From: Octopus bimaculoides
Lineage: Eukaryota
Direction of reading: 5' to 3'
NCBI RefSeq assembly: GCF_001194135.2
Contig: NC_068993.1
Location: 45,249,964 to 45,313,963 of the forward strand
DNA: 64,000 nt
Of this stretch, positions 39,124-42,769 are shown piece after piece (the first letter of the stretch is position 1; the number at the start of each line of letters is the position of its first letter). The position numbers and the translations under genes were made by a program. The notes below the pieces were generated by a model. It saw nothing but the letters and a program-made list of their open reading frames with translations. It was not told the origin of the DNA and did no database searches.

Positions 39124-39172
39124 ATGACATCAGCAACTTGTTCAGTAGTGTTTGTTATTTGTATCTTACAAT
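39124..39172 (+). CDS. Coding exon 1 (signal peptide) of a type I membrane mucin-like protein: MTSATCSVVFVICILQ + 1 nt
   Basis: ATG in a good Kozak context (gccaacATGa) is followed by 16 codons of a hydrophobic signal-like peptide and a canonical donor (caat|GTAAGT, intron starts 39173). The exon is 49 nt (phase 1) and joins in frame to the phase-1 acceptor at 39854/39855 (T+GT = Cys), giving ...ILQCVTS-MSSQRL, a plausible signal cleavage site. Confidence 0.8.
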
Positions 39173-39854
39173 GTAAGTACTTTGCACAGACTGTGTGACT
39201 TTTTTTATTTTAGTCTTTCCTTCTGTTTTATATCTCTCTGTTCTCATATATATATATATCTGCCACTCTCTTTCGTTTCCCCTTGCTTTGAGGTATACTG
39301 TGTTTTTAAACACAATACGTCTTTAAGGGGGTCTCCCCTGGACGAAATACTGCAGCTTCACAGCGTTTAACGACGCGCATACATCAAGTATGTCATTTTG
39401 ATAATGTTTATATTATTTAAGCTGCTACTGATGTAAATTCTAACACACACACACACGTCTCTGTTCTCTTTCTTTATCTGTTTTTGATCAAATTATATCT
39501 TTTAGTCTTTATGTTATCAACTGCTATATATTGATATATTGCATGCCTAAATGAATAGCTATCATTAGTTCAACAGCAGACGGTAGAATGAATAATCACC
39601 GAAATCTTTAGATGTCCCGCACAGCAAATATGCTATATTTCTTTCACATACAGACAAACACATTGGCACACACACAACGCGCATGCACACACGAAGACAC
39701 AAATGCGCACGCGCCCTCACAAATACATACAAACATCTGAAGAGAGCCGGTTTTATTGAAAAATCGAATTTAGTTTTCTACCAATTTTAATTAGTCCTTC
39801 AAGATGTGTACCTGTTGTATTCATATCATATTTTCTCTGTGTATTTTGTTGCAG
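39173..39854 (+). other. 682-bp GT-AG intron (phase 1) of the mucin-like gene
   Basis: GTAAGT donor and a T/C-rich tract ending in GCAG; the phases match on both sides. Confidence 0.78.
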
Positions 39855-42769
39855 GTGTGACTAGTATGAGCAGCCAGAGACTGAAGCCGAGCAAGACTCT
39901 AACAGATACTATTCAAACACAGATATTAAGTTCTGCAGTGGCGGCCAGTAACACATTACGCACTACACAGATAGCTTCTTCTCTTTCCTCTTCAGATGAC
40001 GCTCTCAAGAGCCAAACATCTTTGGAACCTTCTCAAACACTGACAGCACCCAAAACGTTGTCAAAAAGTTCCATATCTACATTATATGGAATTACCAGAT
40101 CTACTCGTTCATTATTACATGATACTTCTACATTGACGGGAACATCTACACATGCTTTACCGAAATCATTGAGAACAGAGACACCGGTACTTTCAAGAAG
40201 TGTGCCAATAATACCAGAGAATACTATGACCGCCACCAAATCTGTAAAACTCACCGATGATTCAACAGCTTTGTCACCGCAACGTACTTCGGTTGAGTCA
40301 GTGCATATTCCTACTACCACATCTACGGAGCAAGAACATTCGCCATCAAAATCTTTTGTTGTCCTTTCAAGCAGTGTCGTAAATAAAGTTGAGCATGTCG
40401 AGAGGTCTACGAAAATGGTTTCCCACTCGTCGTTAGCTAACGTTCATTTGACTCCATCGATGACCTCCGACATGATTTCAACAACTCACTCCTCAACCAT
40501 ACAGCCTTCGCCTTCACTTGCAACTCCACAAAAAACTGACGTCACATCGACGCTTTTAGTCCCTTCAAGGGTCATGTTGTCAGAAGGCACACACTCGACT
40601 GCACAGTCATCGCAAGGTTATGTGACGCATTCTGTCTCTCCTTCAGATCAGAGCACTTCTCGTCCAGTCAGGCTCACGTCTCAACCAAATATACCACCAT
40701 CAGTCGATTCAGTGACGCCATCTACAACTTTATTTGTTAGTAGAAATAAGTCGGTGAACCCCGGCCGCACGTCTTCAGTTCCTCCTATGATACCACCGAC
40801 CAATCAGCCAACCAGTACAAACAATATTCCTACAAATACGATTTCCACTCAAGCTGACTTTGCTTCGAAAATAAACAGCCAACCCTTCTTAGTCTCAAGC
40901 TCTTCGCTGAGTTTGTCTTCGAGAATTGAATCTACTCCACAAGACAGCTCAGTGTCATCACTTAGCCAAGGCAGCTCCGCTTCTCAGCAAACCATATCTC
41001 TTCCTTTCACACCAAATTCTAAAGCGACATTGTTGTCTTCTGAATCACAGAAGACAGATGGCACATATGAAATAACTTCTCCAATATCAACACCGACGCT
41101 AAATTCACAATTGGTGGAGACGAAATGGAGTAGCTCTGTGGAATCCGGAAAATTCACGGAGACTTCATTGTCTTCGAATTCCAACAAAAGCTCCACAGCT
41201 TTTCCTGAGTTGGCAACTTCAAATGTGAGGGTCACTGACAACTTGTTAGAATCCTCATCTCCGGTTAGTTTAACCCAAACTGTCATTCCTTCTGAAACTG
41301 AACCAATATCTTTGACTTTATCAGTCACATCGACTCCATACATGTCATCCAATTTATCTCACATTGAACTGTTGAAACCGTCACATTCTACAAGCTATAA
41401 TACCATGTCAATGTACACAAGTTCTGTTGAATTGCATTCAGCATTGACATCCATTATCACTGAAATTATTCCAACAAGAACGAAAGTAAATATGTCGAAG
41501 ACATATTTTAACGCATCAAACACGTCGGGTTTAGTCTTTTCCACAGCGAACACTGTTTTTGTCTCTGTCTCAAGTTCACAAATTGGAATACCGATATTAT
41601 CTCGATCAACGCAATATTCCAAATTATTGAAATCCCCGAAGACTTTGTCAGCCGATTCCACGATATCAAAGCATAGTTCTACAGTTACTGTGTATTCCAT
41701 CACACCGTCAAACCATGAGACACAAATGCATACGCGCATCTCTCACCCGACGCAGACGGTTATAAAAACGACGAATTCAACACCACTGGGGGCATCTACT
41801 ACGCTTCCTCCGCACAACAAAACCTTTGAAATAGTTTTCAATGGTCTGTGCACTCCTCTCGCGGAGAGACACTTATACGGGCAGTTCTCAGATAATATCC
41901 GTTACATAGTCAGTCGCAAACTGTCGATCAGCTACGACTCTGTCGTTGTACATAACTTAACATGTGCCTCTGTACACGTATATGTCACTCTCCTGAACAT
42001 CGTAACTCAAAGAATTACAGAGAATTTCAAAGAGTTAGTTGGTTCAAGAAAACTGAATATCAGTGTGATTTCCAAGCAAGGCGAGCTTCATTATTCAGCC
42101 GTGAAATTGAAAACGATCGCCGAACCAAGCGTTCAGAAAGAGTTACAGACAGGCGCTTACGAGAAAGACTCTAAAACGAGTGTAATCACCATTGCATGTT
42201 CAGCTATAGTTGCCATGCTGGTCATAGGCTTAGTTGTAGCTCTACGTGAATGTTATAGAAGGAAGCATACGCAGACATTCGACTTAACCAATACACCAAA
42301 CGTTCATATGAAACTTGAAGATTTCACACTCACAAGAATTCCTCGCTCGAGCACATGGTATTCTGATGAAGGTGTGGCAATACAAAGATTCTCAGAAACA
42401 AATGGTAGCACAATGCAAAAATCCTCAAACGGTATTTCAAAACAGCCGACAATCTCGTGTATTTCTGATATATTAAAAGACAAAGAAGCCGACGGAGAAG
42501 AATTGCGACCATTCTCTTATTCCATCTTGTCTAACAATAGTAGAAAAGACAGCCAGGATACCACGGTTTCAATTACAAGCGACAGTAATTTTGCTTATTC
42601 CACAGACAGTCTCGTGCCGCTACCAAAAAGCAGCTCTGGTATGCATGGTGCCGTGAATCCTATCTACTTTGGCGATGAAATGCCTCAGATGGGTTCTAAC
42701 AACAGACTTGACCAAAACGTGAATCCATCAGACACACACGAACAATTCAGACAAGTCTACAACCAATAG
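39855..42769 (+). CDS. Coding exon 2: Ser/Thr-rich mucin stalk, SEA-like domain, TM helix, cytoplasmic tail and stop (protein 987 aa with exon 1)
   Basis: A 2.9-kb stop-free frame in otherwise stop-rich DNA, preceded by a polypyrimidine tract and acceptor (ttttctctgtgtattttgttgcAG|). The translation has an S/T/P-rich stalk, multiple N-x-S/T sequons, a hydrophobic 21-mer VITIACSAIVAMLVIGLVVAL followed by the basic RECYRRKH, and ends at TAG 42767-42769. Confidence 0.92.
41813..42109 (+). other. SEA-like juxtamembrane globular domain with two Cys
   Basis: ~100-aa non-low-complexity segment (HNKTFEIVFNGLC...LSISYDSVVVHNLTCASVHVYVTLL...YSAVKL) between stalk and TM. The alternating hydrophobic beta-strand pattern and position are typical of SEA modules. 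Cys codons at 41849 and 41963. No HMM run. Confidence 0.55.
42182..42244 (+). other. Single transmembrane helix
   Basis: 21 hydrophobic residues VITIACSAIVAMLVIGLVVAL followed by the positive-inside cluster R-E-C-Y-R-R-K-H. Confidence 0.88.

What the first reader, a model, noticed from the sequence alone, without database searches (positions are those of the whole stretch)
39124..42769. Complete two-exon membrane mucin/SEA-like receptor gene whose signal-peptide exon is missed by the ORF track
Seen: a 49-nt exon (Kozak ATG 39124, donor GTAAGT 39173) splices in phase 1 onto a 2.9-kb exon. The product is SP + ~650-aa Ser/Thr/Pro stalk without tandem repeats + Cys-pair globular domain + TM + 174-aa tail. 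Established knowledge: this layout parallels CD34/podocalyxin-type sialomucins and SEA-containing membrane mucins. Inference: it is an uncharacterised cephalopod cell-surface glycocalyx or adhesion receptor. I cannot assign a named orthologue.
Basis: partly seen in the sequence, partly recalled or inferred. Interest (0 to 1): 0.7.

Follow-up and report, generated by a model that had tools for sequence, protein, structure and literature searches.

The report
Octopus membrane mucin gene, already annotated
The two-exon gene is real and encodes a cell-surface mucin-like protein with a small folded domain next to the membrane and a highly conserved intracellular tail. The identical protein is already in the public Octopus bimaculoides annotation, and nobody has tested its function.

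Summary
A 49-nt exon (39124-39172, donor GTAAGT) joins in phase 1 to exon 2 (39855-42769) and gives a 987-aa protein.

That protein is identical, residue for residue, to RefSeq XP_014772170.1 "mucin-3A [Octopus bimaculoides]", which is UniProt A0A0L8HHX6 "SEA domain-containing protein". The gene model is therefore not new.

Supporting evidence:
- Exon 1 and both splice sites are conserved in O. sinensis.
- The acceptor is conserved in a more distant cephalopod.
- A limpet and a scallop homologue have the same layout: a tiny phase-1 first exon inside the signal peptide, then one large exon.

The protein has five parts:
- a signal-like N-terminus;
- a 650-aa non-repetitive Ser/Thr/Pro stalk;
- a two-cysteine alpha/beta-sandwich domain (AlphaFold pLDDT 89) of the SEA-like/ferredoxin-like kind;
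- one transmembrane helix;
- a 174-aa tail.

The tail carries conserved LEDFTLTRIPR and NPIY motifs and shows no amino-acid change between the two octopus species. Relatives occur in gastropods, bivalves, annelids, ticks and a horseshoe crab, and every one I looked up is uncharacterised. It is not a MUC3A orthologue, it matches no Pfam family, and its best fold matches are weak. Function (glycocalyx plus adaptor or endocytic coupling) is inferred only.

The parts
39061..39066 (+). TATA-like hexamer (TATATT) 58-63 nt upstream of the ATG; a possible core promoter element, tentative
   Evidence: Sequence only. No transcript data. An assembly gap lies about 400 nt further upstream (38.4-38.7 kb).
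39124..39172 (+). Coding exon 1: 49 nt, 16 codons plus 1 base, encoding MTSATCSVVFVICILQ, most of the signal-peptide-like N-terminus
   Evidence: Conserved in O. sinensis with 2 synonymous changes and one Ile>Val. It is the N-terminus of the RefSeq/UniProt models in three Octopus species. Patella has a 49-nt phase-1 first exon and Ylistrum a 43-nt one.
39173..39854 (+). Intron 1: 682 nt, phase 1, GTAAGT...pyrimidine tract...CAG
   Evidence: Donor and acceptor are identical in O. sinensis, where the intron is 1524 nt. The acceptor and the first codons (..ag|GTGTGAC[TC]AGT) are conserved in a distant cephalopod.
39855..42769 (+). Coding exon 2: 2915 nt including the TAG stop at 42767-42769
   Evidence: Longest open frame in the window by a factor of 3.7. 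dN/dS against O. sinensis is 0.40 overall.
39866..41815 (+). Mucin-like stalk, residues 21-670: S+T 38%, P 7%, no repeats, 6 N-x-S/T sequons
   Evidence: Composition. No tandem repeats. No internal protein repeats. dN/dS 0.62.
41813..42118 (+). Juxtamembrane two-cysteine alpha/beta-sandwich domain (SEA-like/ferredoxin-like), residues about 670-771; C682 and C720 are invariant in the family
   Evidence: AlphaFold2 with a 54-sequence alignment: pLDDT 89.2, pTM 0.80, order b-a-b-b-a-b-b. Invariant cysteines. Weak fold matches to the SorCS2 membrane-proximal domain, dystroglycan, IA-2 and EpCAM. dN/dS 0.36.
41963..41980 (+). C720-A-S-V-H-V at the beta2/beta3 turn, the position of the G|SVVV self-cleavage site of canonical SEA domains; octopus has Ala where cleaving domains have Gly
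   Evidence: Secondary structure. 26 of 54 related domains have C-G-S-[VIL]-x-[VI] here, 4 have A-S and about 21 have x-P. A non-significant local hhalign match places MUC1 PGSVVVQLTLAF on this stretch. SEA cleavage occurs in the beta2-beta3 loop (PMC6954182).
42182..42244 (+). Transmembrane helix, residues 793-813 (VITIACSAIVAMLVIGLVVAL), followed by the basic stop-transfer sequence RECYRRKH
   Evidence: Hydropathy maximum 2.87 over 19 residues. Same position in all homologues.
42245..42766 (+). Cytoplasmic tail, residues 814-987 (174 aa)
   Evidence: 12 synonymous and 0 non-synonymous differences against O. sinensis. Conserved blocks across phyla.
42314..42346 (+). Conserved tail motif LEDFTLTRIPR, residues 837-847; L842 and R847 are invariant
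   Evidence: Present as [LM]ED[FY][TS]LT[RK]IPR in molluscs, ticks and a horseshoe crab. Invariant columns.
42656..42667 (+). NPIY motif, residues 951-954, followed by acidic residues (NPIYFGDE); N951 and P952 are invariant
   Evidence: NPx[YF] lies near the C-terminus of most homologues. Invariant N and P in the 20-sequence alignment.
42812..42817 (+). First AATAAA after the stop codon; a candidate polyadenylation signal, tentative
   Evidence: Sequence only. Further signals at 43030 and 43036.

Best explanation
Window 39124-42769 (+) is the complete coding region of an Octopus bimaculoides gene that is already annotated as RefSeq XP_014772170.1 'mucin-3A' and UniProt A0A0L8HHX6 'SEA domain-containing protein'.

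Shown here:
- Two coding exons are joined in phase 1 inside the signal-peptide region. This gene layout is shared by a limpet and a scallop homologue.
- The 987-aa product has a hydrophobic N-terminus and a 650-aa non-repetitive Ser/Thr/Pro stalk.
- Next to the membrane lies a compact two-cysteine beta-alpha-beta-beta-alpha-beta-beta domain, then one transmembrane helix and a 174-aa tail.
- The tail is under very strong purifying selection.
- The protein belongs to an unnamed family found in molluscs, annelids and chelicerates. The family is defined by the two-cysteine domain, the juxtamembrane block ECYRRK..FDL, the motif LEDFTLTRIPR(P) and a near-C-terminal NPx[Y/F] motif.

Inferred mechanism:
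- The protein is a type I cell-surface mucin. The stalk is heavily O-glycosylated and projects into the glycocalyx.
- The juxtamembrane domain is a divergent SEA-like module that acts as a rigid, possibly force-sensitive or protease-sensitive, connector to the membrane.
- In about half of the related domains the beta2/beta3 turn carries G-S-[VI]-x-V, the motif of self-cleaving SEA domains. In octopus it is A-S-V-H-V, so self-cleavage is probably absent or slow.
- The tail is the signalling or trafficking end. NPIY is a likely ligand for phosphotyrosine-independent PTB or FERM-F3 type adaptors, or for clathrin-mediated endocytosis, because Tyr and Phe alternate at that position across the family.
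- LEDFTLTRIPR binds a partner that is still unknown.
For: - Gene model. It is identical to the public protein.
- Splice sites: conserved in O. sinensis and in another cephalopod.
- Exon layout: the same tiny phase-1 first exon plus one large exon is found in Patella (49 nt) and Ylistrum (43 nt).
- Coding constraint: dN/dS is 0.40 overall, 0.62 in the stalk, 0.36 in the domain and 0 in the transmembrane helix plus tail.
- Fold: AlphaFold2 pLDDT 89.2, pTM 0.80.
- Fold matches: the best matches include several membrane-proximal alpha/beta-sandwich (ferredoxin- or RRM-like) domains: SorCS2 SoMP (prob 1.0, TMq 0.54-0.57), dystroglycan (0.90), EpCAM (0.75) and IA-2 (0.69). SoMP is described as RRM-like and as carrying a processing site (PMC6065357). 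IA-2, EpCAM, dystroglycan and Notch are treated as SEA-like in PMC6586460.
- Cleavage-site position: motif statistics.
- Family and tail motifs.
- Topology: full-length homologues start with hydrophobic signal-like N-termini, and RECYRRKH follows the helix.
Against: - No transcript reads, SignalP or DeepTMHMM run, or glycosylation data were available.
- No Pfam family matched the octopus protein at E<=10, so Pfam SEA (PF01390) did not, and SEA is not among the families listed for its relatives.
- No PDB fold match reaches E<=0.001, and no canonical SEA structure (MUC1, MUC16) is in the top 50.
- The profile comparison with the MUC1 SEA sequence is not significant.
- The n-region of the proposed signal peptide has no positive charge.
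- NPxY and the other tail motifs are short. Their binding partners are inferred only from general knowledge of NPxY motifs.
- Ala at the -1 position argues against MUC1-type self-cleavage in octopus.
Confidence: 0.6

Rival explanations
1. It is the octopus orthologue of vertebrate intestinal mucin MUC3A, as the RefSeq product name suggests.
For: RefSeq names it 'mucin-3A' and 'mucin-3A-like'. Like MUC3A it is a Ser/Thr-rich type I membrane protein with a SEA-type label.
Against: There are no tandem repeats. There are no EGF-like domains, since the ectodomain has only two cysteines, and no Pfam match of any kind. Among the relatives whose source could be looked up, none is a vertebrate; all are from molluscs, annelids or chelicerates. 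The name looks like a composition-driven best-hit label.
Confidence: 0.03
2. It is a canonical self-cleaving SEA mucin like MUC1: it cleaves itself at the beta2/beta3 turn and sits at the surface as a non-covalent heterodimer that can shed its stalk under force.
For: The fold order and the position of the motif fit. 26 of 54 related domains have G-S-[VIL]-x-[VI] there, and one has GSVVV exactly. The UniProt label is SEA. The juxtamembrane sequence ECYRRK resembles MUC1 CQCRRK (PMC9564314).
Against: Octopus, and the other cephalopod sampled, have Ala instead of the strained Gly. About 21 of 54 relatives have x-Pro there and cannot cleave this way, so cleavage is not a family-wide requirement. 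There is no Pfam SEA match and no solved SEA structure among the top fold hits.
Confidence: 0.15
3. It works as a dystroglycan-like matrix receptor: a glycosylated mucin region binds extracellular ligands and the tail anchors to the cytoskeleton.
For: The layout is mucin, SEA-like domain, transmembrane helix, motif-bearing tail. There are faint, repeated signals to dystroglycan: Foldseek 8yt8_O prob 0.90; Pfam DAG1 E 0.016 and 0.073 in single relatives; and beta-dystroglycan is the top, non-significant, PDB sequence hit of the family profile.
Against: All these signals are below significance, and the sequence hits span the transmembrane region. There is no cadherin-like or Ig-like domain before the SEA-like domain and no PPxY motif in the tail. 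From general knowledge, not tested here, molluscs have a separate true dystroglycan.
Confidence: 0.1
4. The 49-nt exon is not the real first exon. The protein would then start at Met21 (39866) or use another upstream exon, and might be an intracellular Ser/Thr-rich protein.
For: No RNA-seq was examined here. The n-region of the proposed signal peptide lacks a basic residue. An assembly gap lies about 400 nt upstream of the exon.
Against: It is the best of 143 candidates. It is identical to the public models in three Octopus species. The exon and donor are conserved, with mostly synonymous change. Patella and Ylistrum have the same tiny phase-1 exon. Full-length homologues all begin with hydrophobic leaders. 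The two invariant cysteines and the N-glycan sequons fit an extracellular location.
Confidence: 0.05
5. The two-cysteine domain is a TRADD-N-like adaptor domain and the protein belongs to invertebrate immune or apoptosis signalling.
For: Pfam PF20694 'TRADD-like_N' matches 9 of 54 related domains (best single-domain E 4e-5). It matches the four-copy relative P0009 at E 1.5e-20.
Against: The octopus protein does not match. The matches cover only profile positions 14-57 of 69, the helix plus hairpin. The domain is extracellular, disulfide-bearing and flanked by mucin sequence, whereas the TRADD-N proteins in PMC8195603 are described mainly in apoptosis and immune-signalling architectures with the domain intracellular, and that paper reports few or no TRADD-N domains in cephalopods.
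Confidence: 0.03

Closest known systems
MUC1 and other SEA-type transmembrane mucins (MUC3/12/13/16/17)
   Same: A type I membrane protein with a long O-glycosylation-type Ser/Thr/Pro region. An alpha/beta-sandwich domain of about 100 aa sits directly before the transmembrane helix. A [GA]-S-V-x-V motif lies at the beta2/beta3 turn. The juxtamembrane sequence is Cys plus RRK (ECYRRK against MUC1 CQCRRK). The tail is disordered and carries short motifs.
   Different: The stalk has no tandem repeats. There is no Pfam SEA match. Ala replaces the Gly of the cleavage motif. An extra invariant disulfide pair (C682, C720) is present. There are no EGF domains. The tail motifs (LEDFTLTRIPR, NPIY) are unrelated to mucin tails. 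No vertebrate was found among the relatives whose source could be looked up.
Dystroglycan
   Same: A mucin region, a juxtamembrane SEA-like domain, a transmembrane helix and a tail with a short adaptor-binding motif. Weak fold and sequence signals to beta-dystroglycan.
   Different: No cadherin-like or Ig-like domains. No PPxY motif. No significant sequence match. Much simpler ectodomain.
CD34 / podocalyxin / endoglycan sialomucins
   Different: No match to Pfam CD34_antigen in the octopus protein; one relative gave E 0.006 over its transmembrane region only. Two cysteines rather than the larger cysteine set of CD34. The C-terminus is VYNQ, not the DTEL/DTHL PDZ ligand.
SorCS2 membrane-proximal (SoMP) domain and other juxtamembrane SEA-like domains (IA-2, EpCAM, Notch HD)
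   Same: SoMP is among the best fold matches (third by E-value, highest probability and TM-score) (prob 1.0, TMq 0.54-0.57). It is an RRM/ferredoxin-like domain placed just outside the membrane, a position that often hosts processing or shedding sites.
   Different: E-values are only 0.03-0.3. There is no sequence similarity. The neighbouring domains are completely different.
Unnamed protostome family (for example Lottia V4CPS8, Patella A0AAN8JC01, Ylistrum XP_060080872.1, Owenia A0A8J1TG96, Ixodes CAN8032739.1, Tachypleus XP_076312329.1)
   Same: True homologues, with E down to 1e-28 outside cephalopods. They share the two-cysteine domain, the transmembrane helix, the ECYRRK..FDL block, LEDFTLTRIPRP and NPx[YF]. 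In the two molluscs checked (Patella and Ylistrum) the two-exon layout is also shared.
   Different: The stalks are unalignable. Many molluscs have an extra DG[IL]V[IV]G[VI]T block that octopus lacks. Some relatives carry 3-6 copies of the domain. Every member I looked up is annotated only as hypothetical, uncharacterized or mucin-like.

Membership tests
SEA domain (Pfam PF01390 / PROSITE PS50024) | About 100-120 aa alpha/beta sandwich with order beta-alpha-beta-beta-alpha-beta | tested here: met
   AlphaFold2 model with pLDDT 89.2, pTM 0.80. Elements E5-14, H18-40, E48-55, E58-67, H71-81, E86-91, E94-106.
SEA domain (Pfam PF01390 / PROSITE PS50024) | Significant match to the curated Pfam SEA profile | tested here: not met
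   No Pfam family at E<=10 for the whole protein or the C-terminal 339 aa. SEA is not among the families listed for 54 related domains or for 20 C-terminal modules.
SEA domain (Pfam PF01390 / PROSITE PS50024) | Match to the PROSITE/SMART SEA profiles | not testable with these tools
   Indirect only. UniProt names the octopus and Lottia proteins 'SEA domain-containing protein', which implies that some automatic profile hit exists.
SEA domain (Pfam PF01390 / PROSITE PS50024) | G|S[VI]VV self-cleavage motif in the beta2/beta3 loop (present in cleaving SEA domains, not in all) | tested here: not met
   Octopus has C-A-S-V-H-V at that turn. 26 of 54 relatives have G-S-[VIL]-x-[VI], 4 have A-S and about 21 have x-P.
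SEA domain (Pfam PF01390 / PROSITE PS50024) | Specific structural similarity to solved SEA domains | tested here: inconclusive
   Foldseek against PDB gave no match at E<=0.001 and no MUC1 or MUC16 SEA in the top 50. SEA-like domains (dystroglycan, IA-2, EpCAM) and SorCS2 SoMP appear at prob 0.69-1.0, TMq 0.35-0.57. hhalign against the MUC1 SEA sequence is not significant.
SEA domain (Pfam PF01390 / PROSITE PS50024) | Location between an O-glycosylated region and the membrane anchor | tested here: met
   The domain spans residues 670-771, the stalk ends at about 670 and the transmembrane helix is 793-813.
MUC3A (the RefSeq product name) | Tandem-repeat PTS domain | tested here: not met
   TRF finds no repeat in the coding region. 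Self-BLASTP of the stalk finds only the identity hit.
MUC3A (the RefSeq product name) | EGF-like domains flanking the SEA domain | tested here: not met
   Only two cysteines in the mature ectodomain. No Pfam EGF match.
CD34/podocalyxin (Pfam PF06365) | Match to the CD34_antigen profile | tested here: not met
   No hit in the octopus protein. One relative gave E 0.006 over its transmembrane segment only.
CD34/podocalyxin (Pfam PF06365) | C-terminal DT[EH]L PDZ-binding motif | tested here: not met
   The C-terminus is ...QFRQVYNQ.
Dystroglycan (Pfam PF05454) | DAG1 profile match, cadherin-like/Ig-like domain before the SEA-like domain, PPxY in the tail | tested here: not met
   No Pfam hit in octopus. 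Only E 0.016 and 0.073 in single relatives. Ser/Thr-rich sequence runs right up to the domain, and the tail has no PPxY.
TRADD-like_N (Pfam PF20694) | Profile match above the curated cut-off | tested here: not met
   None in the octopus protein. 9 of 54 relatives match partially, and P0009 scores 73 bits summed over four copies.
TRADD-like_N (Pfam PF20694) | Cytoplasmic adaptor context | tested here: not met
   The domain lies between the signal peptide plus stalk and the transmembrane helix, and has an invariant cysteine pair. The TRADD-N proteins in PMC8195603 are described mainly in apoptosis and immune-signalling architectures with the domain intracellular.
Unnamed protostome 'two-cysteine domain + LEDFTLTRIPR + NPx[YF]' family | Two-cysteine domain, one transmembrane helix, ECYRRK..FDL, [LM]ED[FY][TS]LT[RK]IPR, and NPx[YF] near the C-terminus | tested here: met
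   All are present in the octopus protein. Invariant columns are C682, C720, L842, R847, Y852, L936, N951 and P952. phmmer E-values are 1e-103 to 1e-28 for the best non-Octopus members.

The most novel reading that the evidence does not exclude
The octopus gene may belong to an old family of SEA-like transmembrane mucins that the literature has not described, shared by molluscs, annelids and chelicerates. Its real functional unit would be the strictly conserved module of juxtamembrane domain, transmembrane helix and tail (ECYRRK-FDL-LEDFTLTRIPRP...NPx[Y/F]). On this reading it is a protostome signalling or mechanosensing mucin that works like MUC1 or dystroglycan but evolved independently. Lineages would differ in whether the SEA-like domain can self-cleave: G-S in some, A-S or x-P in others.
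Probability: 0.35. Interest if true: 0.4.

Novelty: already known. Interest (0 to 1): 0.2.

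Why it matters
As a gene model it adds nothing, because the same 987-aa protein, signal-peptide exon included, is already in RefSeq and UniProt.

Three smaller points have some value.
1. Method: prokaryote-style ORF calling systematically loses the tiny phase-1 signal-peptide exon of this gene family. The same truncation is visible in ORF-called 'proteins' from another cephalopod.
2. Naming: the RefSeq name 'mucin-3A' is misleading. The protein shares none of the defining MUC3A domains tested here.
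3. Biology: the family is widespread in protostomes and every member I looked up is uncharacterised. Its cytoplasmic tail shows no amino-acid change between Octopus species and keeps motifs from molluscs to ticks. That marks the tail as a tractable starting point for anyone studying invertebrate cell-surface mucins or glycocalyx signalling.

Tried and rejected
- Word-index homologue search with the C-terminal 339 aa found nothing, not even the near-identical O. sinensis protein. The exhaustive phmmer search was needed.
- The profile version of the word-index search returned only 10 in-family, unnamed proteins.
- Pfam on the whole protein, the C-terminal part and 54 + 20 relatives gave no SEA, CD34 or other informative family for the octopus protein.
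- PDB sequence searches with the single sequence and with both family profiles gave only non-significant hits: xanthine phosphoribosyltransferase, MIF, and beta-dystroglycan or FXYD over the transmembrane region.
- Single-sequence AlphaFold2 of the domain was useless (pLDDT 34). Only the alignment-based model was used.
- Foldseek against the viral structure library was uninformative, as expected for an animal gene.
I treat that as a lead, not evidence.
- Rfam scan of the whole window gave no match.
- Literature searches for the accession numbers and for 'mucin-3A' plus octopus found no paper on this protein.
- Pei & Grishin 2017 on divergent SEA domains is not held in the library and is cited only through PMC6586460.
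- Other N-free ORFs in the window gave no Pfam family, apart from a sub-threshold F-box hit.
- I considered and rejected a pseudogene or transposon ORF, because dN/dS is below 1 and there are homologues across phyla. I also rejected the 'DSVVV' at residues 711-715 as the SEA cleavage motif. It lies inside beta2, and the structurally equivalent position is C720-A-S-V-H-V.

Full report
**1. The observation**

- The ATG is at 39124 in the context GCCAACATGA.
- A 49-nt open stretch ends at 39172 and is followed by GTAAGT.
- A pyrimidine-rich tract ending in ttgttgcag places the first base of exon 2 at 39855.
- The reading frame then stays open to the TAG at 42767-42769.
- Splicing 39172 to 39855 is phase 1 (T + GT = Cys17) and gives 2964 nt, or 987 codons.

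The mechanical ORF list shows only 39806-42769, beginning at a GTG. The first exon is therefore invisible to an ORF track.

The frame is not a chance feature.
- It is 992 codons stop to stop, against 270 for the next longest N-free frame in the window.
- With the window's own stop-codon frequency, the chance of 987 stop-free codons is about 2e-23.
- Among 143 possible ATG...GT phase-1 first exons in the 9.8 kb upstream, 39124-39172 has both the most hydrophobic peptide and the best donor.

**2. Identity**

An exhaustive phmmer search with the C-terminal 339 residues found 72 relatives. Cluster look-up then showed that the spliced product is identical over all 987 residues to three public records:
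- XP_014772170.1 and XP_052828416.1, 'mucin-3A [Octopus bimaculoides]';
- UniProt A0A0L8HHX6, 'SEA domain-containing protein'.

The window is therefore O. bimaculoides DNA, and the two-exon model, signal-peptide exon included, is already public. O. sinensis (XP_029655807.1) and O. vulgaris (CAI9732013.1) have 987-aa orthologues with the same N-terminus and 60 and 65 differences respectively.

**3. Independent support for the splice**

- In the O. sinensis genomic locus, exon 1, the GTAAGT donor and the acceptor are conserved. Exon 1 has two synonymous changes and one Ile>Val. The intron is 1524 nt there, against 682 nt here.
- Genomic contigs of a more distant cephalopod (53% identity in the C-terminal part) show the same acceptor and first codons..tttag|GTGTGACCAGT.
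- The homologues of the limpet Patella caerulea and the scallop Ylistrum balloti also have a tiny first coding exon ending in phase 1 inside the leader. Patella's is 49 nt with donor GTTAGT, and Ylistrum's is 43 nt with donor GTAAGT. In both, an intron of 3.0-3.7 kb and a single large exon follow.

I could not inspect RNA-seq reads.

**4. Anatomy of the protein**

- Residues 1-20 are hydrophobic and signal-like. There is no basic residue in the n-region, and V-T-S|M is a plausible cleavage site.
- Residues 21-670 are 38% Ser+Thr and 7% Pro. They have no tandem repeats at DNA level or protein level.
- C682 and C720 are the only ectodomain cysteines.
- Residues 793-813 form the single strongly hydrophobic helix, followed by RECYRRKH.
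- Residues 814-987 are the 174-aa tail.

Against O. sinensis, dN/dS differs sharply between parts:

| Part | dN/dS |
|---|---|
| Stalk | 0.62 |
| Two-cysteine domain | 0.36 |
| Helix plus tail | 0 (12 synonymous, 0 non-synonymous changes) |

The tail is thus the most constrained part of the protein.

**5. The juxtamembrane domain**

A single-sequence AlphaFold2 run failed (pLDDT 34). With a 54-sequence family alignment (A1) the model is confident, with pLDDT 89.2 and pTM 0.80. The order of elements is beta1-alpha1-beta2-beta3-alpha2-beta4-beta5. This is a ferredoxin-like sandwich, the fold described for SEA and SEA-like domains (PMC6586460; PMC6954182).

The two invariant cysteines sit just after beta1 and at the end of beta2. 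Directly after the second cysteine, at the beta2/beta3 turn where SEA domains cleave themselves at G|SVVV, the family splits three ways:
- 26 of 54 domains have G-S-[VIL]-x-[VI], and one has GSVVV exactly;
- about 21 have x-Pro;
- the cephalopods have A-S-V-H-V.

Membership in SEA proper is not established.
- The octopus protein matches no Pfam family at E<=10, and SEA is not among the families listed for its relatives.
- Foldseek against PDB finds nothing at E<=0.001 and no MUC1 or MUC16 SEA domain in the top 50.
- The best fold matches are generic or SEA-like membrane-proximal sandwiches: SorCS2 SoMP, dystroglycan, IA-2 and EpCAM. SoMP is described as RRM-like and as carrying a processing site (PMC6065357).
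- A comparison with the MUC1 SEA sequence aligns only the cleavage-motif stretch and is not significant.

Nine of 54 relatives, but not octopus, give partial matches to Pfam 'TRADD-like_N'. The domain here is extracellular and disulfide-bonded, whereas the TRADD-N proteins in the literature are described mainly as intracellular signalling domains (PMC8195603). I therefore read these matches as similarity of a helix-hairpin element, not membership.

**6. The family**

Named members come from:
- Octopus (three species);
- gastropods: Patella, Lottia, Haliotis, Batillaria;
- bivalves: Saccostrea, Sinanodonta, Mya, Ylistrum;
- annelids: Owenia, Lamellibrachia;
- chelicerates: Ixodes, Ornithodoros, Tachypleus.

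All are labelled hypothetical, uncharacterized or mucin-like.

Nearly all share the same plan:
- a Ser/Thr-rich ectodomain;
- one two-cysteine domain, or 3-6 copies in some members;
- one transmembrane helix;
- a tail with [KR]EC[YW][RK]RK..[ST]FDL, P[HN]VNLKLED[FY]TLT[RK]IPRP, S.E.L and NPx[YF] followed by acidic residues.

In a 20-sequence alignment the invariant positions are C682, C720, L842, R847, Y852, L936, N951 and P952. No paper mentions the accession numbers.

**7. Most likely function**

Shown: a conserved type I membrane protein with a mucin-like stalk, a compact SEA-like juxtamembrane domain and a strongly constrained tail.

Inferred:
- The stalk is O-glycosylated and contributes to the glycocalyx.
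- The domain is a mechanical or proteolytic coupling element. Given Ala at position -1, it is probably not self-cleaving in octopus.
- The tail couples the protein to endocytosis or to PTB/FERM-type adaptors through NPIY. Tyr and Phe alternate at that position in the family, which argues for phosphotyrosine-independent recognition.
- LEDFTLTRIPR binds an unknown partner.

The protein works most like MUC1-type transmembrane mucins or dystroglycan, but it is not a member of either family, nor of CD34/podocalyxin or MUC3A (see the membership table).

**8. Verdict**

The structural interpretation is largely right. The gene model is already known, and the function is untested. The remaining points of interest are the misleading 'mucin-3A' name and the existence of a widespread, uncharacterised protostome family with a very conserved tail.

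Noticed in passing
window 42824-42884: A perfect (TAA)20 microsatellite lies 7 nt after the first AATAAA (42812), about 55 nt downstream of the stop codon. It is either inside or just past the 3' UTR.
   Followed up: no
window, e.g. 1100-1900, 4060-4400, 38420-38700; 7250 N in total: There are many assembly gaps, almost all flanked by di- or tetranucleotide microsatellites (TG/CA, TA, TATG-like). One gap lies only about 400 nt upstream of exon 1, so the promoter region of this gene is incomplete in this assembly.
   Followed up: partly
window 36477-36581; L001 1249-1351, 1456-1532, 11086-11189: An element of about 105 nt upstream of the gene recurs several times, also in reverse orientation and inside intron 1, in the O. 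sinensis locus at 87-92% identity. It is probably a short interspersed repeat.
   Followed up: no
window 39173-39854 vs L001 10050-11573: Intron 1 is 682 nt in O. bimaculoides and 1524 nt in O. sinensis. The flanks align at 87-90% identity, so a large insertion or deletion separates the two species.
   Followed up: partly
L002-L007 (Logan contigs of another cephalopod), about 200-250: The ORF-called proteins P0002 and P0075 start at an internal Met or in intron sequence upstream of the conserved acceptor. Prokaryote-style gene calling loses the signal-peptide exon there too.
   Followed up: yes
relatives P0009, P0016, P0059, P0061, P0071: Some family members carry 3-6 copies of the two-cysteine domain separated by Ser/Thr-rich spacers, reminiscent of the multiple SEA domains of MUC16. 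These members lack the LEDFTLTRIPR motif, and four of the five lack NPx[YF] (P0009 has NPSY).
   Followed up: partly
relative P0009 residues 56-787: Pfam PF20694 'TRADD-like_N' scores 73 bits (E 1.5e-20) on an extracellular, mucin-flanked, four-times repeated domain. Either this Pfam model captures a generic helix-hairpin element, or its family definition includes extracellular SEA-like domains.
   Followed up: partly
L008 3001-3049 (Patella caerulea): The first coding exon of the limpet homologue is exactly 49 nt and phase 1, the same length and phase as in octopus, although the peptide sequence is unrelated.
   Followed up: yes
window 42254-42268 (residues 817-821, YRRKH after C816): The juxtamembrane sequence E-C-Y-R-R-K resembles the CQCRRK start of the MUC1 cytoplasmic domain, a palmitoylation and dimerisation motif. 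It is too short to call homology.
   Followed up: no
window 22606-23247 (-): A 213-aa ORF has a non-repetitive C-terminal half and a sub-threshold F-box match (E 0.008, 16.5 bits against a cut-off of 20.5). This is probably chance or a decayed repeat.
   Followed up: partly
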